Counted from the first letter of the stretch, positions 25,655 to 62,298 are shown. The stretch: 64,000 nt of DNA from IMGVR_UViG_3300033388_007730:124001-188000; one strand, 5' to 3'. Numbers and translations are program-made. Notes: generated by a model not told the origin, from the sequence alone.

Positions 25655-25682
25655 TAAACACTTTTTTGATATGTGTCGATAT
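25655..25682 (+). promoter_or_regulatory. Candidate sigma28/SigD-like promoter upstream of the sigH-like gene
   Basis: TAAA-N16-GTCGATAT versus consensus TAAA-N15/16-GCCGATAW. Confidence 0.45.
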
Positions 25683-25714
25683 AAATAACGCAATATGACA
25701 CATGCGAAAGGAGT

Positions 25715-26434
25715 GTGAATATGGATAAATCCAAGAATGATGGAAAAATCAGTAACTTGGATTATCAGGGTTTAGTAGATATAGTGAGAAGTGGCAGAAA
25801 TAAGAAGCAGAATCAAGCATATAATGAAATAGAAAATAGGATAAGACCAAAGATATATTTTATTATAAGGCAATTTTATATACCAGGATGTAATTATGAT
25901 GATATTTTACAAGAGGCATTATTCGCTTTAAGATATAAAGCTATTCCGGATTATGATGGTAGTCGTGGCAGAGGCGATACCATTTATCCATTTGATAATT
26001 TTGCAGTTCTTTGTATAAGAAGACATTTATCTACATTATTGAAATCTAGCTTCCAAAATAAAAGAAAAGCACTAAATACAAGTTTGTCCTTAGACCAAGA
26101 TAGAAATAATGTTTCAGATGATAGTTTATTTTTATCAGATATAATTCCGAGAACGGAAGGTAGTGTCGTAGGTGATTTGGGAGAAAAAGAATATTATCAA
26201 AAACTATTTAGCAGCTTATACGCAGAGTTGTCTATATTAGAGAAAAGAGTATTTAGTTTATATTCTAAAAGATATTCTTATGGTGAAATTTCTATAAAGA
26301 TAAATAAATATTACAGGAAAAATAAGATAAAGAAAAAGACGAATATTAAATCCATAGATAATGCTCTTTCGAGGATAAAACAAAAAGCAAAAGAAGTTTA
26401 TGAGAGATATGGATTAGAGGAAGAGAATGAGTAA
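25715..26434 (+). CDS. Sigma-70 family factor, SigH/Spo0H-like
   Basis: DDILQEA, FAVLCIRRHL, ALNTSLSLD, LSILEKRV, SYGEIS, KSIDNALSRIKQK. Confidence 0.85.
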   Translation: MNMDKSKNDGKISNLDYQGLVDIVRSGRNKKQNQAYNEIENRIRPKIYFIIRQFYIPGCNYDDILQEALFALRYKAIPDYDGSRGRGDTIYPFDNFAVLCIRRHLSTLLKSSFQNKRKALNTSLSLDQDRNNVSDDSLFLSDIIPRTEGSVVGDLGEKEYYQKLFSSLYAELSILEKRVFSLYSKRYSYGEISIKINKYYRKNKIKKKTNIKSIDNALSRIKQKAKEVYERYGLEEENE

Positions 26435-26501
26435 TAAAATTAGAGAAGATCTTCACTCATCCTGTAAAAAATAATATGTAGTTGTAATAATTAGGTGACG
26501 T

Positions 26502-27404
26502 ATGAACAAAGTAGCATTTTTATTTCCTGGACAGGGATCTCAATTCATTGGTATGGCAGAAGATAGTTATCTGTATGATACTGCAAATGATATATTGGGA
26601 TATGATATAAAAGACATATGTAATAATGGTCCTTTAGAAAAACTCAATTCTACTATAGTTTCACAACCTGCTATATTCATCGCTTCTGCTGTAATGTTAG
26701 AAATATTTGATACGATGATGCCAGAAATTTTCCCCTCTTTTGTGGCTGGATTAAGTTTAGGAGAATATACTGCTTTATATGCCGCAGGAGTGATAAATTT
26801 TGAGACTGGTCTTATGTTAGTTCAGGAAAGAGCAGAGTGGATGCAAGGAGCAGTTGATCGTTCAAAAGGTGGTATGGTTAGTATCATAGGATTAGATGAA
26901 GAAAAAGTTAGAGAATTGTGTAAAGTGGCAGCAGAAGATGAGTATTTAACATTAGCTATTTTCAATTGTCCATCTCAAATAGTTATTAGTGGAGATATTG
27001 TGGCTTGCTATCGTGTTGTATTATTAGCTAAAGAGTGTGGAGCTATCAAAGCTATTAAATTAGATGTTGCGGGAGCTTTTCATTCAAAAATGATGAGATA
27101 TGCTGTCAGTGGATTAAAAGATGTTTTGTGGCATCACATAGATCAAGATTATCAAATTCCTTCTGATGTAAAAATAATATCTAATGTAGATGCTGAGTAT
27201 TATGTTGATGATAATAACATCAGGAATAATCTTGCTGTTCAACTTATTCAACCTATTTTGTGGCAAAAGTGTATGGAGAGATTAATTAGAGATGGAGCAG
27301 ATGAATTTTATGAAATAGGACCAGGGAGAACTCTTACGGGATTAATGAAGAGAATAGACAGAAAACAAAAAATATTTCATGTTTTAGATGTATTAAAAAA
27401 ATAG
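26502..27404 (+). CDS. fabD: Malonyl-CoA:ACP transacylase
   Basis: FLFPGQGSQ, SQPAI, AGLSLGEY (catalytic Ser), GAFHS, EIGPG. Confidence 0.93.
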   Translation: MNKVAFLFPGQGSQFIGMAEDSYLYDTANDILGYDIKDICNNGPLEKLNSTIVSQPAIFIASAVMLEIFDTMMPEIFPSFVAGLSLGEYTALYAAGVINFETGLMLVQERAEWMQGAVDRSKGGMVSIIGLDEEKVRELCKVAAEDEYLTLAIFNCPSQIVISGDIVACYRVVLLAKECGAIKAIKLDVAGAFHSKMMRYAVSGLKDVLWHHIDQDYQIPSDVKIISNVDAEYYVDDNNIRNNLAVQLIQPILWQKCMERLIRDGADEFYEIGPGRTLTGLMKRIDRKQKIFHVLDVLKK

Positions 27405-27415
27405 GAGAATTAAAG

Positions 27416-27493
27416 ATGGTAACAATATTTAATTCAATAGCAATAATATTATTGTGTATTGCTCCTTATACTCATCTTAATAATAATCATTGA
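27416..27493 (+). CDS. Possible 25-aa hydrophobic peptide
   Basis: AGGAG then MVTIFNSIAIILLCIAPYTHLNNNH*. Confidence 0.3.
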   Translation: MVTIFNSIAIILLCIAPYTHLNNNH

Positions 27494-27518
27494 AAAGTGA
27501 AAAGCAATATGCTATAAT
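27490..27518 (+). promoter_or_regulatory. AAAGTGA-box promoter
   Basis: TTGAAAAGTGAAAAGCAATATGCTATAAT. Confidence 0.8.
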
Positions 27519-27557
27519 AAGTAATGTAAATAAAGTTGAAATATAGGAGATGAAGTA

Positions 27558-28823: not shown

Positions 28824-28833
28824 TCAGGATAAT

Positions 28834-30006
28834 ATGAAAAGAATATTTTTATTAGAAGGTTGTTGGTTCTATCGTAATGATGCTCTTTCTAAATTGAAAG
28901 AGGTTGTTGGGGATCATGACTTATATTCTTTTGATAACAAATGTAGTTATGAGTATGTTAAACAAATTATAATGGAGTTATCTTGTTTCGGCAATCGTAA
29001 GTTAATTATTATAAATGAATTGCCATTTGTTAAAGCTCCTAATAAATCTCAAGCTAAGACAAAAGTGACTAATTATTTTCAGAAATTGATTCCAAAAATG
29101 CCAGATGGTAGTATTGTTGTTTTTAATGGTTGTATATCTGAAAGAAATAAGAAGTTTAAAGCTGTTGTCAAGGAACACGGTAAAATATATTCTTCCGAAA
29201 AGAAGAAGAATAAGAATGAGGCTACTAAATTTGTAGTTGGTTTTTTTGAGGGAATTAATAAAGAAATATCATTTGATGATGCATTTATTATAGCTAATTC
29301 TTTGAATTTAGATGTTGATACAGTTGATATGGATAATTTAATTCTGCTGTGCTATAAGGTAAGAGATTATATTGGGGTTAAGAAGAAAGTATCTAATGCT
29401 GATATATTGTTAGTGTGTAATCAGTCCAGAGAGTTCGTGACCTGGAACTTGTTTAATAGTTTTGACGATAAGGATTTTTGTCATGCTATGGAGTTATTGA
29501 ATATACTGTTGAATTCTGCTAAGAGTGTAGAGGGTGAGATAATTAAGTTGATGGCTAGTATCAGGTGGAAGTATAATTTGTTGTTTATGGCTAAGGATGG
29601 TGTTTTTCATGAAATGTCAAAAAAGGAGATAGTTGATAAAATCTCGAAATTAAATAAAATGGAAAGAAGTGGTAGAGGGAAAAAGATTAAAATGAATCTT
29701 AAAGAAGAGAGTGGGAAGACGACTCCTGCCTATTCTAATGCTATGATTAATTCTGTTTTTAATGGTAGAAATGGAAGAAAACCATCATTGTCTTGTTATA
29801 CGCATGATCAATTGATTCTAATTAATTACGCTATAAATAAGTCACTTATAAAGGTTAGATCTGGATGTACAAAGCATGAAATACTTATACCGATAGAGTT
29901 TTTGTTTTTAACTATTTGCGGCAAAATTAAAAAAATAGAGTCTTTGAGAATTTTAGAGAGTAAGAATTTGATAACTTTAGAGGATTATTATGACATCTCT
30001 TGCTGA
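28834..30006 (+). CDS. holA: DNA polymerase III delta subunit-like
   Basis: ELSCFGNRKLIII (cf. SLF..RKLV), VTWNLFNSF...AMELL helical domain; follows dnaN. Confidence 0.65.
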   Translation: MKRIFLLEGCWFYRNDALSKLKEVVGDHDLYSFDNKCSYEYVKQIIMELSCFGNRKLIIINELPFVKAPNKSQAKTKVTNYFQKLIPKMPDGSIVVFNGCISERNKKFKAVVKEHGKIYSSEKKKNKNEATKFVVGFFEGINKEISFDDAFIIANSLNLDVDTVDMDNLILLCYKVRDYIGVKKKVSNADILLVCNQSREFVTWNLFNSFDDKDFCHAMELLNILLNSAKSVEGEIIKLMASIRWKYNLLFMAKDGVFHEMSKKEIVDKISKLNKMERSGRGKKIKMNLKEESGKTTPAYSNAMINSVFNGRNGRKPSLSCYTHDQLILINYAINKSLIKVRSGCTKHEILIPIEFLFLTICGKIKKIESLRILESKNLITLEDYYDISC

Positions 30007-30244
30007 AAATGTAGGTAATTTAATGATGGCTGTGGCAAAAATCCCCGATATTTGCTCAGAATTCCAGAAAACACCGTCTGACGAGAATGGTGAAAAAATT
30101 ATTGAAATAATTGAAGAATCTGAAAAAAAACTATTGACAATTAAGAAGAATATTGTTATAATAGTCAATGACATGAAGGAAGAAGAAAGCTTCAGTGTAG
30201 AAGCAACACTTTCAAATAATGGTTTTATTATTAAGAATGAATAG
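29990..30244 (+). CDS. Hypothetical protein
   Basis: GAGG RBS, 84-aa ORF. Confidence 0.5.
   Translation: MTSLAENVGNLMMAVAKIPDICSEFQKTPSDENGEKIIEIIEESEKKLLTIKKNIVIIVNDMKEEESFSVEATLSNNGFIIKNE
30134..30162 (+). promoter_or_regulatory. Consensus sigma70 promoter without the AAAGTGA box
   Basis: TTGACA-N17-TATAAT with extended TG. Confidence 0.7.
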
Positions 30245-30253
30245 GGAGTAGTA

Positions 30254-31039: not shown

Positions 31040-31071
31040 AAGAGTCGCATCCTTTGATGCGGCTCTTTTTT
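31040..31071 (+). terminator. Rho-independent terminator
   Basis: AAGAGTCGCATC / GATGCGGCTCTT stem with a short loop, then a T-tract. Confidence 0.8.
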
Positions 31072-31134
31072 CATATCTAATGGCTCTTTAAGTCGATATA
31101 TAATATATATTAATATCGATTTAAGGAGAGTATT

Positions 31135-31746
31135 ATGGCTAAAGTAATTGTAGGAGTTGATGTAGGTCTAACAGGTGGAATTTCAATTTTAATTGGCAAA
31201 AAAACACCTTTAGTTTATAAGATTCCAGTAAAAAAAATTGTGGTAAACAAGAAAAATAAAAATACTTATGATATGCCAAGTATTGTAAATATCTTAAAAA
31301 AATATAAAGATGATAATGTGCTATTCTATATTGAGAGGCAATCTACAAGACCTGGTGAAGGAGCCGTTTCAGCAATGACTATTGGGAAGGGATATGGACA
31401 ACTTTTAGGAGTAGCGTATGCTTTTGCTTTTAATATTGTTATAGTTTCTCCTCGAACTTGGAAAAAATGTTTTCCAGAATTAACAACTGATGAGATGTTA
31501 GACATTAAAGCGGGAATGAAGAAGTCGCGGCTGTTTGGCAAAACTTTAGAGGATAAAGACCAGAAAAAAGAGAATAAGAGGTATATTGAAAAATTAGGTA
31601 GAAATTTTAAGTCTTTAGCCAAAAATGAGGCTAGAAAATTAGTTTCTACAAAATATCCTGGGCTTTCCGATTTATTCAAAAAAAAGAATTCAGATGGGTT
31701 AGCTGAATCTTTGTTGATTGCGATATATGGAAGATCACAGGATTAA
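31135..31746 (+). CDS. RuvC-like Holliday junction resolvase
   Basis: VGVDVGLTGG, YIERQ, GKGYG, VSPRTWKK, DGLAESLLIA. Confidence 0.85.
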   Translation: MAKVIVGVDVGLTGGISILIGKKTPLVYKIPVKKIVVNKKNKNTYDMPSIVNILKKYKDDNVLFYIERQSTRPGEGAVSAMTIGKGYGQLLGVAYAFAFNIVIVSPRTWKKCFPELTTDEMLDIKAGMKKSRLFGKTLEDKDQKKENKRYIEKLGRNFKSLAKNEARKLVSTKYPGLSDLFKKKNSDGLAESLLIAIYGRSQD

Positions 31747-32800: not shown

Positions 32801-32950
32801 ATGAAAGAATATAAAAGCAAAAAATACATTAAGATGAATGCTAAAGTTGGCAGCTCTAAGAACAATAATATAAAGCCAATCAAAATAGAACCGAAAAAAA
32901 CAAAGCGAGTTAAATCCAGTTGTGGTGGATGCTCTAGAAGGACAAGATAA
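32801..32950 (+). CDS. Small basic protein ending CGGCSRRTR (49 aa)
   Basis: MKEYKSKKYIKMNAK...SSCGGCSRRTR* fills the gap; below the ORF-track cutoff. Confidence 0.5.
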   Translation: MKEYKSKKYIKMNAKVGSSKNNNIKPIKIEPKKTKRVKSSCGGCSRRTR

Positions 32951-35588
32951 ATTGGATAGACCTACTATAATCAAAATTTTATCTAAGTTTAGATATTTAT
33001 TCCAAGATTTATCTTATGGAGAAGATGCGGTTATGCAAAAGATAACTAACTATCTTCCTTCTAATCATATGGTATTTCCATGCGATGTAATAGATTTGAG
33101 AAAAATACTTATAGATGAAGAAATAAAATTTGATGATTATATACCATTGTTCTCTAAAAGATTTGCTGAGAGTTTTTTAAAAAGATATGCTCTGTTTCTG
33201 GTGATTGATATAAGAAAGATTGATAAGGATAGTTTTAAATATGGTGGTTTGTGTATTTTAAGAGACAATGAGTTAGATATTAGTGACTCTTTAATAAGGA
33301 TAGTAGTTAACAAACAGGCAGCTAATAATACTTTTAATGTGGTGCAAAATATGATGCAAGAATTGAACAAATATGTAGAATGTGTGGTAGAGAATAGTGT
33401 TCCTGGAATGAGTTCTCCTGCCCCTATATTATCATCTAGGAAGATAGTATTTAAAGCAGCTCAGAATGTTGAGTCTGAATTGTCTTTAGACCCGAAAGAA
33501 AAAAATATATTTGATTTTCTTAGAAGGGTTAAAAAAGATTATAATCTTCCTGTTCAGATGAGAGTAGCTGGTGGATGGGTTAGAGATAAATTGCTTGGCA
33601 AAGAAAGTGATGATATAGACATAGCTGTTAATATGCCAGGTTATGATTTTGCTAAGATAGTAGCAGATGCTGCTGTTAAATATAATGTAACGCATGACCC
33701 TAAAGCATACAAGGTTAGTTTAGAAAAATCAAAAGATCCTAGTGAAAAGACTCCTAATGATAGTCTTTTAGTAGGTGCAGTTTATCTTTTCGGGCAGAAA
33801 ATAGAATTTGTTCCTATGAGAACAGAACATTATCCTGATCCTGATAGCAGGCAACCAGAAATAACTAATACTAATGATCCTAGAGAAGATGTTAAAAGAA
33901 GAGATTTAACTATAAATTCTCTTTACTACAATGTTGATACTGGCAAAGTAGAAGATTATGTTGGTGGAAGAAAAGATTTGGGAGTAGACGGAAATGGAAC
34001 TATACTTCTAAGGACTCCTGATGATGCTTATAAAACATTTCATGAAGATCCTTTGAGATTATTGAGAGTTTTGAGATTCCACAGCCGTTATCCTAATAGC
34101 GTAATAGATCCTTCAGTCGTAGAAGCTATGAAAAATCCAGAAGTGCAAGCTTCTTATGCTAGAAAAGTTTCTACAGAGAGAGCTGGACCAGAATTGATAA
34201 AAATGTTATCAGGAGCAAATCCTGTAGATTCTTTAAGATTGTTATTTGAGAGTGGTTTATACAAACAGGTTTTTGATGTTCCTTCTATGAAGAATATAAA
34301 TGAAGAAGGAATAATGATGGATCAAAGAAGTCCTTATCATGAAAAAAGTTTGTCAGATCATACTCTAGACGTTGTGAAGTACTTGAATGAGAAAATGAGT
34401 AATGAGGGTGAAAGTGATTTAATGAGAGGATTGATGAATTTTGCTGCTATGTTCCATGATTTTGGGAAAATGAGTAACAAGGTTGCAAGACCACATAAAA
34501 ATCCAAGATTCGAAGGTCATACTACTTATGTAGGTCATGAAAATGAATCTGAAACTATGGCAGAAGAAATAATGAATTCTATAGGACTTAAGGATTATCA
34601 AAAAAAGATAGTTAAAGCAGTCGTTAAATCCCATATGTTCCCTCATAAGTTCACTGGTTGGGCTGATTCTTGGGCTAAGAAGAAAAAAATATGGAAAGGC
34701 AATGAGGGTCCAGGTAAATTTATGGAGAATCTAAAATTAAAAGGTTTAGATCAAAAGACTAGAGGATTAGAAGAAGATGATGAAGAAGTTATAGATAAGT
34801 CTGCTGACCTTTGGAAGTATGTTCATTATCATGCTGAGGCTGATTCTAAGGCTGGTAAAACTGGGAAGCATGATGAAGGGGAAACAGAGAGAGGTAGACA
34901 GTGGTTTGAAAATTATTACAATGATCCAGCTATAGAATTCACCAGAACGAGAGGTTCTGTCATAGATGGCAATACGATAAAAAATCTTGTTGAAGAAATT
35001 AGTGGATTAGAACAGCAAAAAAGGGATCCTACTCGAACTAAATTGAAAGTTGAAATAACACCTAATGTTATATCATTTGTGCAAAAAAGAATAGCTGATA
35101 TGCAATATAGGCGTTTGATACCTCTTGATTTCGCGGCTATGGAAGAGGGTCCAGAGAAAGAGTCGTCTTTAATAAATTCTCAAAATAGAGCTGCTAATCA
35201 AGCTAGGCAAATAATCAAAAGTAATTTAGATAAATATTTAAAAATAACTCCAATTGAAGGAGAGACTACAATGAGTACTAGTTGGTATGATAAAATAAAA
35301 ACATCTAATACGATATCTAAACCTTTGCCAGTTCCTCAGGAAGAAGATCCTGAAGTTCATAAGGGGCCACAACCCATGGAGGCAAAATATCAAAAAGGCA
35401 TGAGGGTTAGAGATAGAAGAAAGGGTTTGGTAGTCCCTCAGGATTTTGGAGTTGTTTATTCTATTAATAATAATACTAATATTATGATAATACTATGGAA
35501 TCCTGATAATAAAGAAAAGAAAAGAGAAGAGAAATTTGATATGGTTGAAGATACCGAAAAGTTGTCATTGATAGTGGCGGAGGTTTAA
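32922..35588 (+). CDS. cca: Class II CCA-adding / poly(A) polymerase-family nucleotidyltransferase with HD domain and long extensions
   Basis: RVAGGWVRDKLLG, DDIDIA, RRDLTINSL, EDPLRLLRVLRF, STER; HD domain HTLDVV...FHDFGK...GHE; real start may be TTG 32952. Confidence 0.85.
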   Translation: MVDALEGQDKLDRPTIIKILSKFRYLFQDLSYGEDAVMQKITNYLPSNHMVFPCDVIDLRKILIDEEIKFDDYIPLFSKRFAESFLKRYALFLVIDIRKIDKDSFKYGGLCILRDNELDISDSLIRIVVNKQAANNTFNVVQNMMQELNKYVECVVENSVPGMSSPAPILSSRKIVFKAAQNVESELSLDPKEKNIFDFLRRVKKDYNLPVQMRVAGGWVRDKLLGKESDDIDIAVNMPGYDFAKIVADAAVKYNVTHDPKAYKVSLEKSKDPSEKTPNDSLLVGAVYLFGQKIEFVPMRTEHYPDPDSRQPEITNTNDPREDVKRRDLTINSLYYNVDTGKVEDYVGGRKDLGVDGNGTILLRTPDDAYKTFHEDPLRLLRVLRFHSRYPNSVIDPSVVEAMKNPEVQASYARKVSTERAGPELIKMLSGANPVDSLRLLFESGLYKQVFDVPSMKNINEEGIMMDQRSPYHEKSLSDHTLDVVKYLNEKMSNEGESDLMRGLMNFAAMFHDFGKMSNKVARPHKNPRFEGHTTYVGHENESETMAEEIMNSIGLKDYQKKIVKAVVKSHMFPHKFTGWADSWAKKKKIWKGNEGPGKFMENLKLKGLDQKTRGLEEDDEEVIDKSADLWKYVHYHAEADSKAGKTGKHDEGETERGRQWFENYYNDPAIEFTRTRGSVIDGNTIKNLVEEISGLEQQKRDPTRTKLKVEITPNVISFVQKRIADMQYRRLIPLDFAAMEEGPEKESSLINSQNRAANQARQIIKSNLDKYLKITPIEGETTMSTSWYDKIKTSNTISKPLPVPQEEDPEVHKGPQPMEAKYQKGMRVRDRRKGLVVPQDFGVVYSINNNTNIMIILWNPDNKEKKREEKFDMVEDTEKLSLIVAEV

Positions 35589-41012: not shown

Positions 41013-41405
41013 ATGAATTTTAAAGATATAATAAAAAAATATAGAGACAGGAATAAAAGCACAATATCTTCTGACAATGTGTCTCATGAGATGAATGCCA
41101 TTGTGCTTTATTCAACGTCTAATGCTCTATTTGATTTTAATGGTGTTATGATTGATGATGTTATGTCTTATGGCAAATCTAAGGGATACAACATAGATAA
41201 AATTGTTTTTCTTACCTCATATGATATAGAATTTACTGATGAGAATAAAGGTGTTAAAAAAGTAGACGATAATTCAATTAGGATTAGTCAGAATTATAGG
41301 ATGAAAAGTGATGCCAAAATAAGTATTATAGAAGAAGATGGAAAAGTAATTGCCAGGGTTTTTATGGGATCTTATATTATTGTAGGTAAAATACGTGAAA
41401 AATAA
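41013..41405 (+). CDS. Hypothetical protein
   Basis: 130-aa ORF overlapping the kinase start. Confidence 0.55.
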   Translation: MNFKDIIKKYRDRNKSTISSDNVSHEMNAIVLYSTSNALFDFNGVMIDDVMSYGKSKGYNIDKIVFLTSYDIEFTDENKGVKKVDDNSIRISQNYRMKSDAKISIIEEDGKVIARVFMGSYIIVGKIREK

Positions 41406-42861
41406 AATATCAAAAAAACGGTGGTTTTCTGAGGTAGTTCTGTATAATATGCGGGAGTCTATAATAATTACGAATGTCGATGGAGTAATAATTTATGTGA
41501 ACAAAGCAACAGAAAAATTATTTGGTTATACTGAAAAAGAAATGATAAATCAGAAACCAATAATGGTTAATGCTGAACCTGATGCAGAGAAAATCCAGGA
41601 ATCTATTTTAGAGGCTATGCTATGTGATGGGGAATGGAAAGGGCAGTTGCTTAATAGGAAAAAAAATGGTGATTTATTCACAGTTGAATTAACAATATGT
41701 CTTCTAAAAGATCTATATGATAACTTAGTTGGTTTTATAGGATATCAAAAAGATGTGACAAAAGCACTTAAGGCATCCAAGAAGATAAAAGAGAGTGAAG
41801 AGAAGTTTAGAAAAATTTTTCAAAATTCTCCTATGGGTATGCACTTGTATCAATTAAACATGGATGATGAGTTAGTTTTAATAGACTCTAATCCTGCTGC
41901 TGATGATTTTACAGGTATTAACACTGTTGATTTTATCGGAAAAACTCTCGAAGAAGCTTTTCCAGTTTTAATCGGTACAGAGATTCATGAAAGATACAAA
42001 ATGGCAGCTTCTAAAGGTATCTCTTGGAATACATCTTCTTTTACATACAAAGATGAAAGAATAAATGGTATTTATGATATATGGGCATATCAAATTTCAC
42101 GTAATCGTGTATTAGTACAGTTTGTTGAAGTAGTTAAGAGAGAACACGTTGAAGAGGAATTAAGAAATAGAAATCAAGAGTTAGAACAATTCGCATATGT
42201 AGCTTCTCATGACCTACAAGAACCATTGAGAGTAGTATCTAATTATTGTGAGATGTTGAGTGATAAATGCAAAACTTGTCCAAGAAGAGATAAAGATACT
42301 GAAAAGTGGTTGGAATATATAACGGAAGCTATTGATAGAATGAAAAATTTAATAAGGGAGTTATTGGATTTTTCTAGGGTAGGAAGAAAAGATAAATCAT
42401 TTGAGAGTTGTAATATAGGAGACATAATAGAAGATGTTAAAGATGATTTCAAGATATTGATAAAAGAGACTGATGCTGTTATAAAAGTAGAAGAGAACAT
42501 GCCATCAATAAATTGTATCGAATTCAGAATTAGACAATTATTTTATAATTTGATAAGTAATGCTATAAAATTTAGGGGAAAGAAAAAACCGCATATAGAT
42601 ATAAGCTTTTATAAAGAAGATGACGAATATGTATTTTGTGTTAAAGATAATGGGATAGGAATTTCACCAAAATATTTTGATAGAATCTTTGGAATATTTA
42701 AGAGATTGTATTCTAGAGAAGAATATCCTGGTACAGGAATAGGTCTTGCTTTATGTAAGAAAATAGTAGAAACTCATAATGGCAGAATATGGGTTGATTC
42801 TAAAGAGAATAAAGGGGCTTCTTTTTATTTTACCCTTTCTACAGTATTAGAAAGTGATTAA
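41395..42861 (+). CDS. Cytoplasmic PAS-PAS sensor histidine kinase
   Basis: Two PAS domains; H box FAYVASHDLQEPLR; N box NLISNAIKF; G1 DNGIGI; G2 GTGIGLALC. Confidence 0.93.
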   Translation: MKNKISKKRWFSEVVLYNMRESIIITNVDGVIIYVNKATEKLFGYTEKEMINQKPIMVNAEPDAEKIQESILEAMLCDGEWKGQLLNRKKNGDLFTVELTICLLKDLYDNLVGFIGYQKDVTKALKASKKIKESEEKFRKIFQNSPMGMHLYQLNMDDELVLIDSNPAADDFTGINTVDFIGKTLEEAFPVLIGTEIHERYKMAASKGISWNTSSFTYKDERINGIYDIWAYQISRNRVLVQFVEVVKREHVEEELRNRNQELEQFAYVASHDLQEPLRVVSNYCEMLSDKCKTCPRRDKDTEKWLEYITEAIDRMKNLIRELLDFSRVGRKDKSFESCNIGDIIEDVKDDFKILIKETDAVIKVEENMPSINCIEFRIRQLFYNLISNAIKFRGKKKPHIDISFYKEDDEYVFCVKDNGIGISPKYFDRIFGIFKRLYSREEYPGTGIGLALCKKIVETHNGRIWVDSKENKGASFYFTLSTVLESD

Positions 42862-42879
42862 AAAATATTATTTTTTTCT

Positions 42880-42907
42880 TTGAAAGTGATTATGAATATG
42901 GTATATT
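42880..42907 (+). promoter_or_regulatory. AAAGTGA-box promoter
   Basis: TTGAAAGTGATTATGAATATGGTATATT. Confidence 0.65.
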
Positions 42908-42935
42908 AAAGATTAATTGCTTATTTTATCGATAA

Positions 42936-45142: not shown

Positions 45143-45185
45143 AATATCCCCCAACATTCATTGTGATATTGGGGGATATTTTTTT
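45143..45185. terminator. Probable bidirectional terminator between convergent genes
   Basis: AATATCCCCCAA / TTGGGGGATATT stem followed by a T-tract. Confidence 0.75.
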
Positions 45186-45597: not shown

Positions 45598-45607
45598 TTT
45601 ACTCTCA

Positions 45608-46123: not shown

Positions 46124-46153
46124 TATATTATGAATTTATTTTCTATTTCCTTT
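46124..46153 (-). promoter_or_regulatory. Candidate sigmaH-like promoter for the receiver pair
   Basis: Minus strand AAAGGA-N17-TAATATA. Confidence 0.35.
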
Positions 46154-46154
46154 G

Positions 46155-46183
46155 TGGAAAAGTGAAAAATAATATGGTAAAAT
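46155..46183 (+). promoter_or_regulatory. AAAGTGA-box promoter
   Basis: TGGAAAAGTGAAAAATAATATGGTAAAAT. Confidence 0.7.
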
Positions 46184-46226
46184 AGCGGTATGATTGTAAA
46201 AAGAGATTATTTTTGGAGAAAAGTAG

Positions 46227-52721: not shown

Positions 52722-52728
52722 TTTGTAC

Positions 52729-52757
52729 TTTCAAAGTGAAAGATAATTATGTATAAT
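52729..52757 (+). promoter_or_regulatory. AAAGTGA-box promoter
   Basis: TTTCAAAGTGAAAGATAATTATGTATAAT. Confidence 0.7.
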
Positions 52758-52797
52758 TATCGTAATAAATGTTATTTTTTAATTAGGAGAACTTAGT

Positions 52798-56871: not shown

Positions 56872-56938
56872 GCATAGAAATAAATAAAGGATTTTATACC
56901 ATTTATTTTTAATATAAAAGTTAATAATTAACCTAAAA

Positions 56939-57148
56939 ATGAGATTTGCTCAGGAATGGCCTGGGCAAATTTTTTCTATTTACAATGTGCCATCATTGAA
57001 AGAAAAAAATATGAGTATTCTAAAAAAGTTTTTTGTGTTCCGTTGGTTATATAATTTGAAAGTAGCTCGTAATGAAAAAAAACAAAGAGAGAGAATACGA
57101 TATTCTGAAAAAAGGTGGGAAATGAAATTAAGAGGATTAAAAAGGTAA
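56939..57148 (+). CDS. Hypothetical basic protein
   Basis: Short ORF; start may be the downstream MSIL. Confidence 0.35.
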   Translation: MRFAQEWPGQIFSIYNVPSLKEKNMSILKKFFVFRWLYNLKVARNEKKQRERIRYSEKRWEMKLRGLKR

Positions 57149-57195: not shown

Positions 57196-59568
57196 ATGGA
57201 AGATATAAATATCAAATCATTATTACAAGGTGGAATTCGTAAAGATCCAGAAGATGATAGAGATTTTATTTTTACAACACCACATATTCCTGATCATACT
57301 GTCTTGGGAAGTGCTGATTCTATTCCATTAAAAATAGATCATTCTAATAAGATGGGTTCGGTTAAGTTTCAAGGTGCGTTAGGATGCCATGATATTAGAA
57401 CAGAAATACTTACAGAAAAAGGTTGGAAACTATTTAAAGATTTGGATAAAGAAGAAAAAGTAGCTACCGTTAATCCTAATACCCATGAAATTGAATATCA
57501 AGAGCCAATTAATTATTTAGAATATGATTATGAAGGAGATATGTATTATTTTCACCATAAAAGTGGATTAGATGCTATGGTTACTCCTAATCATAAGATG
57601 TATGTCAAGAAATGGGATAATAAAAATATGACATTAAAAGAAGAATTTGAATTCATTGAAGCACAAAATATGGGTTGGTATTCTGGATTGTTGACAAAAA
57701 TTGATTGGGATGGGATCTCTCCCAAAACAATGAAAATGCCAGATGTTGAGATAGGACAAAGAAATGGAAGCAAAAAACAATCTATAAGAATAGGTAAAGA
57801 AATTGATACTACTAATTTCATTACATTTTTGGGATTATATTTAGCAGAGGGCTGTTGTTATCGTCCTGAGGGTAGTGGATCTTACAGAATTGAGATCGCC
57901 GCTAGTGACAATAATGATAGGAAAAATGAAGTTATTGAAATTATTGATGATTTGCCGTATAAATATACTATTTATCATGATAGGATAACAATATGGAATA
58001 AATCTTTATATACATTTCTTAAGCCTTTTGGGAATGTTTATACTAAGTCAGTACCAAGATTTGTTATGGATTTGAATAAAAAGGATATCGCTGCATTTAT
58101 GTATGGTTATTATTTAGGAGATGGATCTTTTCATGATAATGGGGCAAGGACAGGGTATTCGGTATCTGAACATTTAATTGATGATCTTCAAGAACTATCT
58201 TTGAAAATAGGGGTATATAGTAGGAAAAAAAGTAGATCACCTAGAATTGCATATATTAAAGGTAGAAAAATTTTTGGTAAAGAAAGTTATGAACTTCATG
58301 AAAGACAAATAGATACGAAGTTGTCGATAGATAGAAATAAATATTCATCCAAAGTTCCATATAATAATAAAGTATATTGTGTAGAAGTCCCTAATCACAT
58401 ACTTATTACTAGAAGGGGTGGTTGTATTCTAATTTCTGGCAATTCGTGCGTAGCGTTTGCAGCTTGTGCTTTAAAAGAGTGGCAAGAAACAATAGAACAT
58501 GAAAAGGAAGTTTTGGCAGGGAAAAAAGATCATAGAGAAGGTAAAGAATATAATTTGTCTGAACAGTGGATTTATTGGAATTGTAAAAAAATAGATCCAT
58601 GGCCTAATTCTGAAGGAACAAATCTGAGATCAGCTATGAGAGTATTAAATAAGATTGGAGTTCCTACCGAACAAGCTTGGGGTTACACTGATGATAAGGT
58701 GAACATTGGTGAACCTGAAAGCTGGGCATATATGATAGCAAGGTGGAATTTAATAGGGTCTTATTGGAGAATATCAGGATTAGATCAAATTAAAAAAGCA
58801 TTGATCGAGAGTCCTATTATTATTGGGATGGCTTGTTTTAGAGAAATGTATGGTAATTTAGAACATGGTTTAATACCTTATCCTGCTAATCCTGGAGAAG
58901 TAATGTCTCATCATGCTGTTTGTGTTGTTGGTTATGATGAAGAGAAAAAACTCTTAAAATTTAAAAATAGTTGGTCTAAGTTCTGGGGAGATGTTGGTTA
59001 TGGATATATACCTTATGATTATGTAAGAGATTTTGTATGGGATGCGTGGATTGCTAGAGATATTAGTGTAACTCATGAAATGCTTGAAGGTACTAGATTA
59101 TTGGTAGGTGCAGATGTACCAACAGTAATAGAGATAGCTGAGACACCACTTATACAAAAAGATACAGAAGAGAATTTTTCTTTTGTAGGATTTAAGTATC
59201 CTTCTCTTTTAGATACTTTTTCTATTATTAAAGATATTTTTGGAGTTCCAGAAATAGAGATATTTAGAGCTTCTAAAAAGGTGGGAGTTAAATTAGAAGA
59301 TTCTTCATCTATTAACTTATTCTGTAAAAAATATTTTGCTGAGTTTAGAAAAGAATCTGTAAAGAAATATGGATTTGAAGTCGATGTTATTAAAGTGGAT
59401 GATGAATATCCAATTATTGGTATTTGTTTGTGTGAAAAAGAAATTAGTGATAAATTTGATGAAAATCAGATAAAGATAGAAGATGTAATGAAAAAAGTGG
59501 TTGGCATGAGAGATATATTGGCTCTTGGCAAAGATATAATAATTTACAATGGTGTGAGAAAATATTAA
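57196..59568 (+). CDS. Papain-family (C1A) cysteine protease containing an intein
   Basis: Spliced motif QGALGSCVAFA, LSEQWIY, HAVCVVGYD, KNSWSKFWGDVGYG. Confidence 0.9.
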   Translation: MEDINIKSLLQGGIRKDPEDDRDFIFTTPHIPDHTVLGSADSIPLKIDHSNKMGSVKFQGALGCHDIRTEILTEKGWKLFKDLDKEEKVATVNPNTHEIEYQEPINYLEYDYEGDMYYFHHKSGLDAMVTPNHKMYVKKWDNKNMTLKEEFEFIEAQNMGWYSGLLTKIDWDGISPKTMKMPDVEIGQRNGSKKQSIRIGKEIDTTNFITFLGLYLAEGCCYRPEGSGSYRIEIAASDNNDRKNEVIEIIDDLPYKYTIYHDRITIWNKSLYTFLKPFGNVYTKSVPRFVMDLNKKDIAAFMYGYYLGDGSFHDNGARTGYSVSEHLIDDLQELSLKIGVYSRKKSRSPRIAYIKGRKIFGKESYELHERQIDTKLSIDRNKYSSKVPYNNKVYCVEVPNHILITRRGGCILISGNSCVAFAACALKEWQETIEHEKEVLAGKKDHREGKEYNLSEQWIYWNCKKIDPWPNSEGTNLRSAMRVLNKIGVPTEQAWGYTDDKVNIGEPESWAYMIARWNLIGSYWRISGLDQIKKALIESPIIIGMACFREMYGNLEHGLIPYPANPGEVMSHHAVCVVGYDEEKKLLKFKNSWSKFWGDVGYGYIPYDYVRDFVWDAWIARDISVTHEMLEGTRLLVGADVPTVIEIAETPLIQKDTEENFSFVGFKYPSLLDTFSIIKDIFGVPEIEIFRASKKVGVKLEDSSSINLFCKKYFAEFRKESVKKYGFEVDVIKVDDEYPIIGICLCEKEISDKFDENQIKIEDVMKKVVGMRDILALGKDIIIYNGVRKY
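57385..58443 (+). mobile_element. Intein (353 aa) with LAGLIDADG endonuclease at the protease active site
   Basis: QGALG|CHDIRTEILT ... VYCVEVPNH...ISGN|SCVAF; VTPNHKM; FLGLYLAEG and YYLGDG. Confidence 0.93.
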
Positions 59569-59576
59569 AAAAAGTG

Positions 59577-59604
59577 TTGATATTTGTATTTTTTCTGCTA
59601 TAAT
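59577..59604 (+). promoter_or_regulatory. Sigma70-like promoter for the tmRNA
   Basis: TTGATA-N16-TATAAT with TG-n extension. Confidence 0.55.
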
Positions 59605-59629
59605 ACGATAGTTCTTATAAAATTAAATA

Positions 59630-60011
59630 GGGGACGACAGGATTGACTGGATAGGTAGAAAATTGAATTGCATGTCAGAGATGGTAGTTGGCTCTGTAAA
59701 AAATCTACTAAAAAGTTTAATTGCAAACAGTTACGCAATGGCTGCTTAAGCAGCAGGAGGGTGGCATAGCCTACCTTCCACCGATGTCTGTAAGGGAGTT
59801 TCCTGCTGGAACTTACAGGCTAATTTAGGCAGGATAGCCGAGAAACATTTTCTCATGGTGTGATTGGCGACAAGTCCCGATAAGGGGATGAGATAGCGAA
59901 AGTTAGGGTTAGTCCGTTGTTCCTAACATAGTGAAAAAAAAACAACGGACTATACATGTAGATGTTTGATTTGAAATATCACAGGACGAGGCTTCAATGC
60001 CTCCGTCTCCA
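59630..60011 (+). ncRNA. ssrA: tmRNA; tag (A)ANSYAMAA at 59723-59749
   Basis: 5' GGGGACG pairs with 3' CGTCTCC-A with G3:U; T-arm GAGGC-TTCAAT-GCCTC; GCATGT/ACATGT helix; resume codon GCA; tag ends AA*. Confidence 0.92.
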
Positions 60012-60041
60012 TTATGATGAAGTTTTTTTAAGGATGTAATA

Positions 60042-60392: not shown

Positions 60393-60394
60393 AA

Positions 60395-60565: not shown

Positions 60566-60594
60566 TTTACTAACTAATTTATAGGAGACTGATA

Positions 60595-60966
60595 ATGAGT
60601 AGAACGTATCGAAGAGATGCAGTTGTATTAGACTGTAATTGTGGCGCACCTGTAGGATCTCATTGGAGATTTTTTTGGAGACCAGGATCTATTACTCCTA
60701 ATAGGGAAATAGATATAGAACTTAGAAGATCTCGTAGTAGAGGATTACCACCAGATAGAATGTGTCATTGTTGGACTAATAAACAATATGATTTTTATTC
60801 TAAAAGAAATTACAAGAGAGATCATAAATCTTGGCGTAAATGTAACAGAACTTGGAAAAAGATTTATCAAAAGAAACGTAGAGCCAGGATTAGAGCAGCA
60901 ATGAGTCATAAGGATTATGAGAATATTCCTAAATTCAGAAAGGAAAATGACTGGAATTGGATTTAA
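60595..60966 (+). CDS. Arg/Lys/Trp-rich hypothetical protein
   Basis: AGGAG RBS; MSRTYRR...RRARIRAAM...WNWI. Confidence 0.6.
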   Translation: MSRTYRRDAVVLDCNCGAPVGSHWRFFWRPGSITPNREIDIELRRSRSRGLPPDRMCHCWTNKQYDFYSKRNYKRDHKSWRKCNRTWKKIYQKKRRARIRAAMSHKDYENIPKFRKENDWNWI

Positions 60967-60988
60967 TTTTCACCCTTCTCTAGTCCCC

Positions 60989-61023
60989 TGCCTCTCATCT
61001 CTTGTAGATGGGAGGCATTTTTT
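60989..61023 (+). terminator. Rho-independent terminator
   Basis: TGCCTCTCATCT-CTTGT-AGATGGGAGGCA followed by T6. Confidence 0.85.
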
Positions 61024-61047
61024 ATTTATAAATTTTATGTTTTTTAG

Positions 61048-61076
61048 TTGAAAGTGATTATTTTTTATGGTATAAT
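61048..61076 (+). promoter_or_regulatory. AAAGTGA-box promoter, probably leaderless
   Basis: TTGAAAGTGATTATTTTTTATGGTATAAT ending 6 nt before ATG 61083. Confidence 0.75.
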
Positions 61077-61082
61077 ATCGTT

Positions 61083-61700
61083 ATGAAAGATGGAATAAAA
61101 AATGAAGAAGTTCTTTCAGAAGAACAACAAAAACTCATATCTAAAAATATGGGACTTTTAGATGCTTTTTACAAGACTGAGATAGGAAAAGGGTATATCC
61201 CTGATCAAAAAAAAGATGATTTTTTCAGTAATCTTCAACAGAGATTTTGTAATGCTGCTCTTAAATATAATGAAGATGCTGGGTTTAAGTTTAGTACTTT
61301 TGCTTATGGTAGTTTTATTTTTTGTGCAGCAGAAATGAAAAAAAAGCTTTTCAGAGACAGAAAAGTTTTTACTGGTAATGATAAGAAATTTGTTTCATAT
61401 GGAAAAAAATCTGTTTGGAATTCTATAAATGGATGGGATGTTGATTCTGTTATCAATTATGAAAAGGTAGTTAATCTTGTAAATAAAGTTCCTTTATCTG
61501 AAAAAGAAAGAACAGTAATTAATTTTTATTATTTTGAGGGTCTTACTCTTTTAGAAACAGGAAAAAAATTGGGACTCTCCAGACAAAGAATAAAACAAAT
61601 AACATTAGAAGCTATTTATAAAATTAAGAGATTTGCTGATAGAAGAGATTATAGAATAGGAGATTTTGTTAAGTATGGTGAAGGGTTTGTAAATGGCTAG
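61083..61700 (+). CDS. Alternative sigma-70 factor (SigF/FliA-like, regions 2 and 4)
   Basis: YNEDAGFKFSTFAY, LSEKERTVI..YYFEGLTLLETGKKLGLSRQRIKQI. Confidence 0.85.
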   Translation: MKDGIKNEEVLSEEQQKLISKNMGLLDAFYKTEIGKGYIPDQKKDDFFSNLQQRFCNAALKYNEDAGFKFSTFAYGSFIFCAAEMKKKLFRDRKVFTGNDKKFVSYGKKSVWNSINGWDVDSVINYEKVVNLVNKVPLSEKERTVINFYYFEGLTLLETGKKLGLSRQRIKQITLEAIYKIKRFADRRDYRIGDFVKYGEGFVNG

Positions 61701-62298
61701 ACCTTATGGAGGACACTATTTAACAGAAGAGCAGAAGAAATTAGCAGGAGATAATCTCCCTCTTGTCTGGTGGTTCATAAGTAAGTATGCATTGACAAAA
61801 GGAGTTATTCAAGTTCATGAAATAGATGAATGTTCTGGTTATTTGATTTGGCATCTGTGTATGTCTGCTGAAGCTTATGATCCTGATAGAGGCGTTAAAT
61901 TTAGTAGCTATGCTGTGAAAGGAATGTGGAGCGGATTACATATTTATTTAAATCTTAGAAATAAGCGTATTAATAGATTTATATCAACTGACTGGACTAT
62001 GCAGGGCAATGACGGAGCCATGTCTAATGAACCAGAATATAAGTCTAAAGCAGAGAGGACCATTAAGTGGAAAGATATTAAATCTTTATTTGATATCATA
62101 ACCATGAGTCCATTAGAAGAGCAAATTGTTTTCTTCACTTATGAGAAAAAATATTCTGCTAAACGGGTAGGAGACATTGTAGGTTTAACAGGAGAACGTA
62201 TCAGACAGCTTAAAGTAATAATAATTGATAAAATAAAAATTGCTGTTAAGGAAAATAATGTTTCGATAGAAGATTTTATTATGGATGATAAGGAATAG
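61693..62298 (+). CDS. Alternative sigma-70 factor (SigF/FliA-like), paralog of 61083
   Basis: LTEEQKKLAGDNLPLV, YDPDRGVKFSSYA, VGDIVGLTGERIRQL. Confidence 0.85.
   Translation: MARPYGGHYLTEEQKKLAGDNLPLVWWFISKYALTKGVIQVHEIDECSGYLIWHLCMSAEAYDPDRGVKFSSYAVKGMWSGLHIYLNLRNKRINRFISTDWTMQGNDGAMSNEPEYKSKAERTIKWKDIKSLFDIITMSPLEEQIVFFTYEKKYSAKRVGDIVGLTGERIRQLKVIIIDKIKIAVKENNVSIEDFIMDDKE

What the first reader, a model, noticed from the sequence alone, without database searches (positions are those of the whole stretch)
25655..62298. Possible three-step sigma cascade in which candidate promoters match the encoded sigma types
Seen: two tandem SigF/FliA-like sigma genes (61083, 61693) behind an AAAGTGA promoter; a TAAA-N16-GTCGATAT site directly upstream of the SigH-like gene (25655), with GTCGATAT again before the resolvase (31092) but no clear TAAA there; and AAAGG(A/T)-N17/18-(G/T)AATATA sites at 16940 (+), 46153 (-) and 56886 (+). 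Known: sigma28/SigD reads TAAA-N15/16-GCCGATAW, SigH reads AGGA-N17/18-GAAT, and phage SPO1 uses a sigma cascade. Inference: sigma28-like factors turn on the SigH-like factor, which drives a later class including topA, the receivers and the protease. The instances are few and the background is AT-rich, so this is tentative.
Basis: partly seen in the sequence, partly recalled or inferred. Interest (0 to 1): 0.65.

Follow-up and report, generated by a model that had tools for sequence, protein, structure and literature searches.

The report
Sigma-factor relay in a huge phage
This piece of an uncultivated huge phage carries three sigma-factor genes and at least four families of promoter-like sites, arranged and conserved in related phages in a way that fits a stepwise, SPO1-style transcription relay, though no step has been tested by experiment.

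Summary

- **Source.** The window is part of a 219-kb phage record, about 44% complete, with relatives up to 548 kb.
- **Sigma genes.** There is a SigH-like gene (25721-26434). Two tandem paralogous small sigma genes follow at 61083-62298; the first has a FliA-like region 4.
- **"AAAGTGA promoter".** It is a textbook sigma-70/SigA-type promoter (TTGAAA-GTGA-N-TGnTATAAT). There are about 20 copies in the record and 18-31 per related genome. It is conserved before the tandem sigma genes in at least four genomes.
- **TAAA-N16-GTCGATAT site.** It occurs once in the 219 kb. It is conserved at the same place before the SigH-like gene in 48 distinct relatives.
- **AAAGGw-N17-GAATAT sites.** These form a real family. 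A matrix trained only on a relative finds 6 intergenic hits here against 0.07 expected. The sites look like mapped C. difficile SigH promoters.

The inferred order is host sigma, then tandem sigmas, then SigH-like sigma, then the SigH-type class. It is consistent with the layout, but which sigma reads which promoter is inference. topA is not a conserved target; many SigH-type sites belong to homing endonuclease genes. A fourth family (TTCCAGAC…TAGAAT) was missed. This is a new member of a known kind, of moderate interest.

The parts
60989..61017 (+). Intrinsic-terminator-like hairpin with T-run, ahead of the tandem sigma operon
   Evidence: 12-bp stem followed by TTTTTT. It separates the operon from upstream transcription.
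61048..61076 (+). Class A promoter: TTGAAA(GTGA)-N17-TATAAT with TG, sigma-70/SigA type
   Evidence: 11 of 12 consensus matches plus TG. The same motif lies upstream of the sigma orthologues in G001, L018 and L020, and about 0.5 kb upstream in G004.
61083..61700 (+). Tandem sigma gene 1 (205 aa) with a FliA/WhiG-like region 4
   Evidence: Pfam Sigma70_r4 E 8e-13. The best NCBIfam hits are FliA/WhiG, E 5e-13, over region 4 only and far below cut-off. It is a paralogue of gene 2.
61693..62298 (+). Tandem sigma gene 2 (201 aa), regions 2 and 4
   Evidence: Sigma70_r4 E 1.4e-5, weak r2, and 41.3 bits against the sigma70-ECF superfamily model (cut-off 42.9). It is 44% identical to its G001 orthologue.
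62285..63031 (+). HTH_3 DNA-binding protein in the same operon; possible co-regulator
   Evidence: Pfam HTH_3 E 1e-6 and PHROG transcriptional repressor. Its role was not tested.
25654..25690 (+). Class D promoter: TTAAA-N16-GTCGATATAAAT (sigma28-like / SPO1-late-like), directly upstream of the SigH-like gene
   Evidence: Unique in the 219 kb. Conserved in 48 distinct orthologous sequences, with information peaks at TTAA, TTTTC and ATAT-GTCGATAT. It scores 29.4 bits with a matrix trained on other genomes.
25721..26434 (+).
   Evidence: NCBIfam SigH models match at E 5e-22 to 7e-20 over the full length, below cut-offs. The family profile hits only PDB 3mzy, a sigma-H factor, at E 5e-10. There are more than 400 homologues, on contigs up to 548 kb.
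31040..31067 (+). Terminator-like hairpin before the resolvase promoter
   Evidence: 12-bp stem plus T-run. An equivalent hairpin is present in the relatives.
31083..31105 (+). Class D variant with a -10 only: CTCTTTAAGTCGATATATAA
   Evidence: CTCyTAAGTCGATAw is conserved upstream of the orthologous gene in seven relatives. There is no TTAA/TAAA at -35, and it scores below 10 bits with the full two-block matrix.
31135..31746 (+). Holliday-junction-resolvase-like gene downstream of the class D variant
   Evidence: PHROG 1770, E 8e-18.
16940..16969 (+). Class H site: AAAGGT-N17-GAATATA, upstream of an HNH endonuclease gene (17013-17840) and topA
   Evidence: It scores 10.6 bits with the G001-trained matrix. 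The HNH orthologues in G001 and L006 also have class H sites, although the gene sits in a different place relative to topA.
56886..56916 (+). Class H site: AAAGGA-N18-TAATATA, upstream of a 69-aa ORF and the intein-bearing papain-like protease
   Evidence: 17.3 bits with the G001-trained matrix. AAAGGATTTT is conserved in G001, but the distance to the downstream TTAATAT block is three nt longer there.
46124..46153 (-). Weak class H-like site upstream of two receiver-domain genes (45184-46081, - strand)
Evidence: G001 has AAAGGT-N17-GAAGTTATA at the same place.
46152..46189 (+). Class A promoter (TGGAAAAGTGA…TGGTAAAAT) driving the thymidylate synthase gene, divergent from the receiver genes
   Evidence: 37.5 bits, the best class A score in the record. 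Conserved in G001.
16533..16570 (+). Class A promoter
   Evidence: 32.8 bits.
21038..21075 (+). Class A promoter heading the run of genes that ends at the clamp loader, just before the SigH-like gene
   Evidence: 32.0 bits. No terminator was found between 25647 and 25721, so read-through into the SigH-like gene is possible.
27487..27524 (+). Class A promoter before the sliding-clamp-like gene
   Evidence: 27.0 bits; TTGAAA-N17-TATAAT with TG.
42876..42913 (+). Class A promoter
   Evidence: 28.2 bits.
52726..52763 (+). Class A promoter
   Evidence: 31.1 bits.

Best explanation
The window belongs to a lytic-type huge phage that appears to run a stepwise transcription programme by swapping sigma factors on the host RNA polymerase, as Bacillus phage SPO1 does.

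**Step 1 (sequence shown, reader inferred).** About 20 sigma-70/SigA-type promoters (class A, TTGAAA-GTGA-N-TGnTATAAT) are read by the host housekeeping sigma. One of them drives the operon with two paralogous small sigma genes (61083-62298).

**Step 2 (inferred).** One of these sigmas reads a rare, highly conserved promoter (class D, TTAA-N17-GTCGATATAAAT). The likeliest is the first, whose region 4 is FliA-like. The main target of class D is the SigH-like sigma gene (25721-26434). A -10-only variant sits before the resolvase gene.

**Step 3 (inferred).** The SigH-like sigma reads class H promoters (AAAGGwTTT-N12-cGAATATA). These have the form of mapped clostridial SigH promoters. They precede about 8 genes in this record and about 30 in a complete relative. 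Their targets include many free-standing homing endonuclease genes, a Ro60-like gene, a tail-fibre-like gene and probably the protease.

**Fourth family (reader unknown).** Class C (TTCCAGAC-AAGTGA…TAGAAT) needs a further reader. It could be the second tandem sigma, or host sigma redirected by a phage factor.
For: **Sigma genes**
- Region 4 or full-length sigma matches for all three genes.
- The SigH-like family profile hits only a solved sigma-H factor, 3mzy.
- The tandem genes are paralogues.
- No other sigma gene is found in the 219 kb.

**Class A**
- 17-19 coding-strand hits, 16 of them intergenic, and none on the other strand.
- 18-31 coding-strand matches in each of G001-G004, against 0-4 for the control.
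- Conserved upstream of the tandem sigma genes in four genomes, behind a terminator.

**Class D**
- 61 of 70 metagenomic loci have yCGATA upstream of the SigH-like gene.
- 48 distinct sequences share TTAA / TTTTC / ATAT-GTCGATAT at fixed spacing, while the flanks vary.
- A matrix built from them finds only 1-5 sites per genome, and the SigH-like gene is always the best.
- The published SigD motif is TAAA-N15-GCCGATAT (PMC5200910). One relative has GCCGATAT.

**Class H**
- Spacing-specific intergenic excess in G001: 14 at N17 against a median near 3.
- The N17 versus N16 control across G001-G004 gives 33 versus 13 on the coding strand.
- Cross-genome matrix test: 6 hits against 0.07 expected.
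- The sites have the same form as experimentally assigned C. difficile SigH promoters, such as AAAAGAGGA…GTAGAATATA (PMC7438776, Table 3).

**Targets**
- Annotated.
Against: - No expression data exist, and no sequencing run was listed.
- The pairing of each sigma with a promoter class rests on family resemblance only. The tandem sigmas miss every family cut-off, and only region 4 of the first looks FliA-like.
- Class D spacing is one nt longer than the SigD consensus. The motif equally resembles the SPO1 late promoter CGTTAGA(N17-19)GATATT (PMC3601020).
- No terminator separates the SigH-like gene from the upstream class A-driven genes. It may therefore also be made early by read-through.
- If the host has its own SigD and SigH, host factors could read these sites.
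- The record is only 44% complete. Structural genes were not located, so "late" is not established.
- More distant relatives (about 50% identity) have the SigH-like gene with no intergenic gap and no class D site.
Confidence: 0.55

Rival explanations
1. The promoter families are real, but host alternative sigma factors read them (host SigD/FliA for class D, host SigH for class H). The phage sigma genes then serve another purpose, such as manipulating host stationary-phase or dormancy programmes, as proposed for sporulation-like sigmas of Bacillus phages.
For: Class H sites cannot be told apart in form from cellular SigH promoters (PMC7438776), and class D is close to the SigD motif (PMC5200910). 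Phage sigma homologues that alter host dormancy rather than drive phage genes have been described (bioRxiv 10.1101/2021.11.12.468384). The window also encodes a PAS histidine kinase and two receiver-only proteins, which points to signalling functions.
Against: A lytic huge phage that depended on host motility and stationary-phase sigmas would be hostage to the host's state. The SigH-like gene and its class D promoter are conserved together across hundreds of relatives. The phage sigmas are very diverged from cellular ones, as expected for dedicated phage factors. The host is unknown, so its sigma repertoire cannot be checked.
Confidence: 0.2
2. There is a cascade, but the pairing differs from the reader's. 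For example, the tandem sigmas read the large class C family, and class D is read by the SigH-like factor itself (autoregulation) or needs both tandem proteins, as SPO1 late transcription needs gp33 and gp34.
For: Class C is a large strand-specific family (21, 4 and 12 copies in G001-G003, control 0) with no assigned reader. Three phage sigmas and three non-housekeeping classes allow several pairings. Class D matches the SPO1 late consensus, which is read by gp34 together with gp33 (PMC3601020). The tandem genes are adjacent, as SPO1 genes 33 and 34 are (from my own knowledge).
Against: Class C shares the AAGTGA block and a TATAAT-like -10 with class A. That fits a redirected housekeeping sigma better than a new sigma. 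Class D (GTCGATAT) has none of the AGGA/GAAT features expected for a SigH-type reader.
Confidence: 0.17
3. GTCGATAT is the binding site of a repressor or activator (for example the HTH_3 protein at 62285-63031), not a -10 element.
For: In this genome the site before the resolvase gene lies in an inverted repeat, TCGATAT…ATATCGA. A DNA-binding protein is encoded in the sigma operon.
Against: The inverted repeat is not kept in relatives, whereas the one-sided CTCyTAAGTCGATA is. The conserved block before the SigH-like gene is asymmetric. It has a partner element (TTAA) at fixed promoter-like spacing, and it lies about 40-45 nt before the start codon. At the resolvase gene it follows a terminator, so transcription has to restart there.
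Confidence: 0.06

Closest known systems
Bacillus phage SPO1 sigma cascade (host SigA early, then gp28 middle, then gp33/gp34 late)
   Same: Host-type early promoters drive a phage sigma gene, and later classes have their own -35/-10 motifs. The phage sigmas are small, about 200 aa. Class D resembles the SPO1 late consensus CGTTAGA(N17-19)GATATT (PMC3601020). The class H -35 (AGGA) recalls the SPO1 middle -35 (from my own knowledge).
   Different: No sequence relation to SPO1 sigmas was detected; there are no hits in GenBank phages. The order of motif types is reversed: the GATAT-type comes before the AGGA-type. There are three sigma genes and at least four promoter families. The genome is two to four times larger and uncultivated. 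Nothing has been tested experimentally.
Cellular SigH (Spo0H) regulon of Bacillus and Clostridioides
   Same: The phage protein matches SigH models over its full length, and a solved sigma-H is its only PDB relative. Class H sites have the form of mapped C. difficile SigH promoters (PMC7438776).
   Different: Scores are far below the equivalog cut-offs (71 against 295 bits). The targets are phage genes, mostly homing endonucleases, not sporulation or transition-phase genes.
SigD/FliA (sigma-28) promoters, TAAA-N15-GCCGATAT
   Same: There is a TAA(A) -35 and a G(T/C)CGATAT -10. Region 4 of the first tandem sigma scores best against FliA/WhiG models (PMC5200910).
   Different: The spacer is 16 nt, not 15, and T usually replaces the first C. 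There is an additional conserved TTTTC in the spacer. The sigma lacks a detectable FliA-type region 2/3 and misses the family cut-off.
Sporulation-like sigma factors of Firmicutes phages (Schwartz et al.)
   Same: One phage carries several sigma genes that resemble host alternative sigmas.
   Different: Those are SigF/G-like and thought to act on host dormancy. Here, cognate promoter families lie in the phage genome itself, including in front of another phage sigma gene.
Free-standing homing endonuclease genes of T4-like phages with their own middle or late promoters (from my own knowledge)
   Same: HNH, LAGLIDADG and GIY-YIG genes here each carry a class H promoter that travels with the gene.
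   Different: The promoter type is different, and expression has not been shown.

Membership tests
Sigma-70 family sigma factor (the three genes) | Detectable region 2 (core and -10 binding) and region 4 (-35 binding) | tested here: met
   The SigH-like gene aligns over its full length to SigH models and has a weak Sigma70_r2 hit. Gene 2 has a weak r2 and an r4 above cut-off. Gene 1 has a strong r4 and aligns end to end with gene 2 at 26% identity.
SigH (Spo0H) equivalog, TIGR02859 / PRK08295 | Score above the curated cut-off | tested here: not met
   71-78 bits against cut-offs of 208-414.
SigH (Spo0H) equivalog, TIGR02859 / PRK08295 | SigH is the best and full-length match among sigma families, including solved structures | tested here: met
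   E 5e-22 against 7e-7 for the general model. The only PDB hit is 3mzy, a sigma-H factor, at E 5e-10.
SigH (Spo0H) equivalog, TIGR02859 / PRK08295 | Cognate promoters of the form AGGA-N17-GAAT present and enriched | tested here: met
   compared with PMC7438776. That the phage protein reads them has not been shown.
FliA/WhiG (sigma-28), TIGR02479 | Score above cut-off with regions 2, 3 and 4 aligned | tested here: not met
   47 bits against a cut-off of 189.6, and only region 4 aligns (residues 137-183).
FliA/WhiG (sigma-28), TIGR02479 | Cognate promoter TAAA-N15-GCCGATAT | tested here: inconclusive
   Class D is TAA(A)-N16-G(T/C)CGATAT (PMC5200910). It is close but not identical, and it equally resembles the SPO1 late motif.
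Phage sigma cascade of the SPO1 type | The first phage sigma gene lies behind a host-type promoter | tested here: met
   Class A promoter at 61048-61076, conserved in G001, L018 and L020 and nearby in G004.
Phage sigma cascade of the SPO1 type | A later phage sigma gene lies behind a promoter of a different, non-host-housekeeping class | tested here: met
   Class D upstream of the SigH-like gene in 48 distinct orthologous sequences.
Phage sigma cascade of the SPO1 type | Each class is transcribed in turn and depends on the preceding sigma | not testable with these tools
   No RNA run was listed. This needs time-course RNA data or in vitro transcription.
Phage sigma cascade of the SPO1 type | The last class drives virion (late) genes | tested here: inconclusive
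   One tail-fibre-like gene in G001 has a strong class H site. Terminase was not found with PF03237, and capsid and portal genes were not searched for. Most annotated class H targets are homing endonucleases.

The most novel reading that the evidence does not exclude
A widespread clade of environmental huge phages (up to about 550 kb) runs a four-tier transcription programme with three of its own sigma factors. One tier is little more than a dedicated sigma-to-sigma relay: class D exists mainly to switch on the SigH-like factor. Mobile homing endonuclease genes have adopted the last-tier promoter as a portable expression cassette.
Probability: 0.35. Interest if true: 0.6.

Novelty: new member of a known kind. 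Interest (0 to 1): 0.5.

Why it matters
Almost nothing is known about how uncultivated huge phages schedule hundreds of genes. This analysis reads a promoter grammar of four families directly from sequence, and conservation across many relatives supports it. The three sigma genes are placed as a relay would require.

That gives concrete reagents for in vitro transcription or reporter tests without needing to culture the phage. It also gives a way to sort genes of unknown function into temporal classes. If host sigmas read these sites instead, the finding would link the phage's development to the host's motility or stationary-phase state.

Tried and rejected
- **Close relatives.** Searches with single sigma proteins in IMG/VR found nothing. 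An alignment query was needed.
- **GenBank phages.** There are only remote hits for the SigH-like protein and none for the tandem sigmas.
- **Lak megaphage idea.** I considered whether this is a Lak megaphage of Prevotella with TAG recoding. I set it aside for three reasons. Reading TAG or TGA as sense hardly raises coding density. Genes have strong Shine-Dalgarno sites. Relatives come from sediment, lake and marine metagenomes.
- **First motif finder.** A zero-order-background finder was swamped by A/T-rich noise. Dyad enumeration and matrices tested across genomes worked instead.
- **Spacing error.** One pattern search was sent with the wrong spacer (N16). I kept it as a negative control.
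- **RNA evidence.** No sequencing run was listed for the SigH-like region, so no reads were laid.
- **Late genes.** Terminase was not found with PF03237, so I could not tie any class to packaging genes.
- **Operator reading.** I judged a palindromic-operator reading of GTCGATAT unlikely, because the palindrome is not conserved.
- **Extra sigma hit.** A weak Sigma70_r4 hit at genome position 83766 belongs to a LAGLIDADG/HTH endonuclease-like protein, not a fourth sigma.

Full report
**What the window is.** The window is bases 124001-188000 of a 219,188-bp IMG/VR virus record. CheckV estimates the record at 44% complete. It has 31.6% G+C, and about 94% of its ORFs lie on one strand. Reading TAG or TGA as sense hardly raises coding density, so the standard code is used here. 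Homologues of its SigH-like protein number more than 400. They lie on contigs of up to 548 kb. IMG/VR holds relatives of 298-548 kb. One of these, G001 (547,943 bp, complete, 33.6% G+C), is syntenic with the window, and I fetched it whole for comparison. The 80 metagenomic loci come largely from sediment, lake and marine data sets. The Lak/Prevotella idea that I first considered is therefore not supported.

**The sigma genes.**
- The ORF at 25715-26434 most likely starts at the ATG at 25721, which gives the family's conserved MxKS N-terminus.
- It matches NCBIfam SigH models over its full length (E 5e-22 to 7e-20). The scores are far below the equivalog cut-offs.
- A profile of its family hits a single solved structure, the sigma-H factor 3mzy, at E 5e-10.
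- The two overlapping ORFs at 61083-61700 and 61693-62298 both carry Sigma70 region 4. They are full-length paralogues at 26% identity, E 9e-12.
- Only region 4 of the first scores best against FliA/WhiG models, at E 5e-13. Neither gene reaches any family cut-off, so "SigF/FliA-like" overstates the case.
- They have no detectable relatives in GenBank phages.
- G001 has the same tandem pair. G002 and G003 show one copy, and G004 has a weakly similar pair.
- No further sigma gene is seen in the 219 kb. A weak region-4 hit at genome position 83766 belongs to a LAGLIDADG/HTH endonuclease-like protein.

**Class A, the "AAAGTGA promoter".**
- The site before the tandem sigma genes reads TTGAAA-N17-TATAAT with a TG, at 61048-61076. 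It follows a strong terminator at 60989-61017.
- It belongs to a family with the consensus TTGAAAGTGAww-N-TGnTATAAT.
- A matrix finds 17-19 copies on the coding strand of the record. Sixteen are intergenic, and none lies on the other strand.
- The pattern AAGTGA-N11-13-TAWAAT occurs 31, 21, 18 and 24 times on the coding strand of G001-G004. The control pattern gives 0-4.
- The motif is conserved upstream of the tandem sigma orthologues in G001, L018 and L020. A copy also lies about 0.5 kb upstream in G004.
- This is a housekeeping sigma-70/SigA-type promoter with an extended -10. The tandem sigma operon therefore looks like an early, host-transcribed unit.

**Class D, the sigma28-like site.**
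- TAAA-N16-GTCGATAT at 25655-25682 is the only such site in the 219 kb. Counting within this genome therefore cannot test it.
- Comparison can. The element is present at the same position in L006, L008 (where it reads GCCGATAT), L009-L013 and others.
- Among 70 metagenomic loci with enough upstream sequence, 61 have yCGATA.
- Forty-eight distinct sequences give a profile of TTAA at -21 to -18, TTTTC at -13 to -9, and ATAT directly before GTCGATAT. The positions between these blocks vary.
- A matrix built from these sequences finds the SigH-like gene's site as by far the best hit, at 29.4 bits here and 32.9 in G001. Only two weaker sites appear here and four in G001. The class is therefore very small.
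- A -10-only variant, CTCyTAAGTCGATAw, is conserved in seven relatives. It lies between a terminator and the gene at 31135-31746, which PHROG 1770 identifies as a Holliday junction resolvase.
- The published SigD motif is TAAA-N15-GCCGATAT (PMC5200910). Class D differs by one spacer base and usually a T for the first C.
- Class D equally resembles the SPO1 late consensus CGTTAGA(N17-19)GATATT (PMC3601020).
- The conserved block is not palindromic. The inverted repeat seen at 31092 in this genome is not conserved either. A promoter reading is therefore preferred to an operator.
- Relatives at about 50% identity have the SigH-like gene with no intergenic gap and no such site.

**Class H, the SigH-type sites.**
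- In G001, AAGG[AT]-N17-[GT]AAT[AT] gives 14 intergenic coding-strand hits. The median for other spacers is about 3. AGG[AT]-N18-AATATA gives 10+4 against 0-3.
- In G001-G004 the N17 pattern gives 33 coding-strand matches, against 13 for N16.
- A matrix trained only on G001 intergenic sites finds 6 hits of at least 14 bits in this record's 25 kb of intergenic DNA. Sixty Markov simulations give 0.07 on average and at most 1. Reversed sequence gives 0 and the reverse complement gives 1.
- The consensus aAAAGGwTTT-N12-cGAATATA has the form of experimentally assigned C. difficile SigH promoters (PMC7438776, Table 3).
- The 16940 site precedes an HNH endonuclease gene rather than topA itself. In G001 that endonuclease lies downstream of topA and has its own class H site, and topA there has no upstream gap. 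L006 also has a class H-like site before its HNH gene.
- Annotated class H targets are dominated by free-standing homing endonucleases (HNH, LAGLIDADG, GIY-YIG). Others are a Ro60/TROVE gene and a collagen-like tail-fibre gene in G001.

**Class C, a fourth family.**
- Dyad counting in G001 revealed TTCCAGAC(A)AgTGAttttt-N-(G)ATAGAAT.
- Copy numbers are 21, 4 and 12 on the coding strand of G001-G003. G004 and G005 have none, and the control pattern gives none.
- In G001 the sites cluster in a 33-kb stretch of small genes, and many abut an ATG.
- This record has three variants, TTCCnCCAGAGTGAA, at genome positions 207049, 214388 and 217036.
- Class C shares the AAGTGA block and a TATAAT-like -10 with class A. 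Its reader is unknown.

**Interpretation.** The layout is what a sigma relay requires:
- a host-type promoter before the first phage sigma genes;
- a different, rare and strongly conserved promoter before the next sigma gene;
- a third family, matching that sigma's type, before a set of other genes.

What is shown is that the sites exist, are conserved, are strand- and spacing-specific, and are placed as described. What is inferred is who reads them and in what order.

Several caveats apply.
- No RNA data could be found.
- The SigH-like gene may also be reached by read-through from the class A promoter at 21038, because no terminator intervenes.
- Host SigD or SigH could read the sites.
- Three phage sigmas and three non-housekeeping families allow other pairings.
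- Virion genes were not located, so calling class H "late" is tentative.

**Comparison and novelty.** Phage sigma cascades are a known kind, with SPO1 as the model. Multiple sigma genes in Firmicutes phages have also been described. I found no report of this clade's promoter grammar in the searchable library. The finding is best filed as a new member of a known kind. Its unusual details are a near-dedicated promoter for the SigH-like gene, homing endonucleases that carry the SigH-type promoter, and an unassigned fourth family.

Noticed in passing
window 59630-60014 (+), promoter 59577-59604: A phage-encoded tmRNA (Rfam RF00023, 108 bits, full length) has its own TTGATA-N16-TATAAT promoter with a TG. 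ARAGORN did not report it.
   Followed up: partly
window 22942-25647 and 57196-59568: Two genes carry inteins with LAGLIDADG endonuclease domains. One is the clamp-loader gene (901 aa here against about 370 aa in relatives). The other is a papain-family cysteine protease.
   Followed up: partly
window 41395-42861 (+) and 45184-46081 (-): The phage encodes a PAS-HisKA-HATPase histidine kinase and two receiver-only response-regulator proteins. This resembles a phosphorelay, and it sits in a phage that also carries a SigH-like sigma. The receiver genes are conserved in G001.
   Followed up: no
G001 (oriented) 360-393 kb; this record at 207049, 214388, 217036 (outside the window): A large fourth promoter-like family, TTCCAGAC-AAGTGA…TAGAAT, is present. 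In G001 it often abuts the ATG directly, which suggests leaderless or very short-leader transcripts.
   Followed up: partly
record positions 6784, 83736, 141013 (= window 17013), 211130; G001 204299, 241910, 377886: Free-standing homing endonuclease genes (HNH, LAGLIDADG, GIY-YIG) each carry a class H promoter. Two in G001 (109234, 394118) carry class D-type sites. The promoter moves with the gene.
   Followed up: partly
window 56941-56973 (+): A strong terminator-like hairpin (14-bp stem plus T-run) lies only about 25 nt downstream of the class H site at 56886, inside the start of the 69-aa ORF. This may be a short RNA or an attenuator ahead of the protease gene. The ORF itself is conserved in G001.
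   Followed up: no
window 32922-35588; record 205248-206987 and 209058-210257 (outside the window): RNA repair or tRNA maintenance genes are present: a CCA-adding/poly(A)-polymerase-HD protein, a Ro60/TROVE protein and a T4-type RNA ligase. I did not look for a partner Y-like RNA for Ro60.
   Followed up: no
window 30134-30162 (+): A perfect 12-of-12 TTGACA-N17-TATAAT with a TG lies inside or at the end of the small ORF 29990-30244, ahead of the gene at 30369. It lacks the GTGA block of class A.
   Followed up: no
window 26502-27404 (+): An acyltransferase (malonyl-CoA:ACP transacylase-like, Pfam Acyl_transf_1) lies next to the SigH-like gene. It is conserved in the closest relative but absent at that position in G001 and L008.
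   Followed up: no
record 71155-71195 (outside the window): Here a class A promoter's TATAAT is directly followed by GTCGATATA. This may be an overlapping dual promoter before a small zinc-ribbon (NrdR-like) gene.
   Followed up: no
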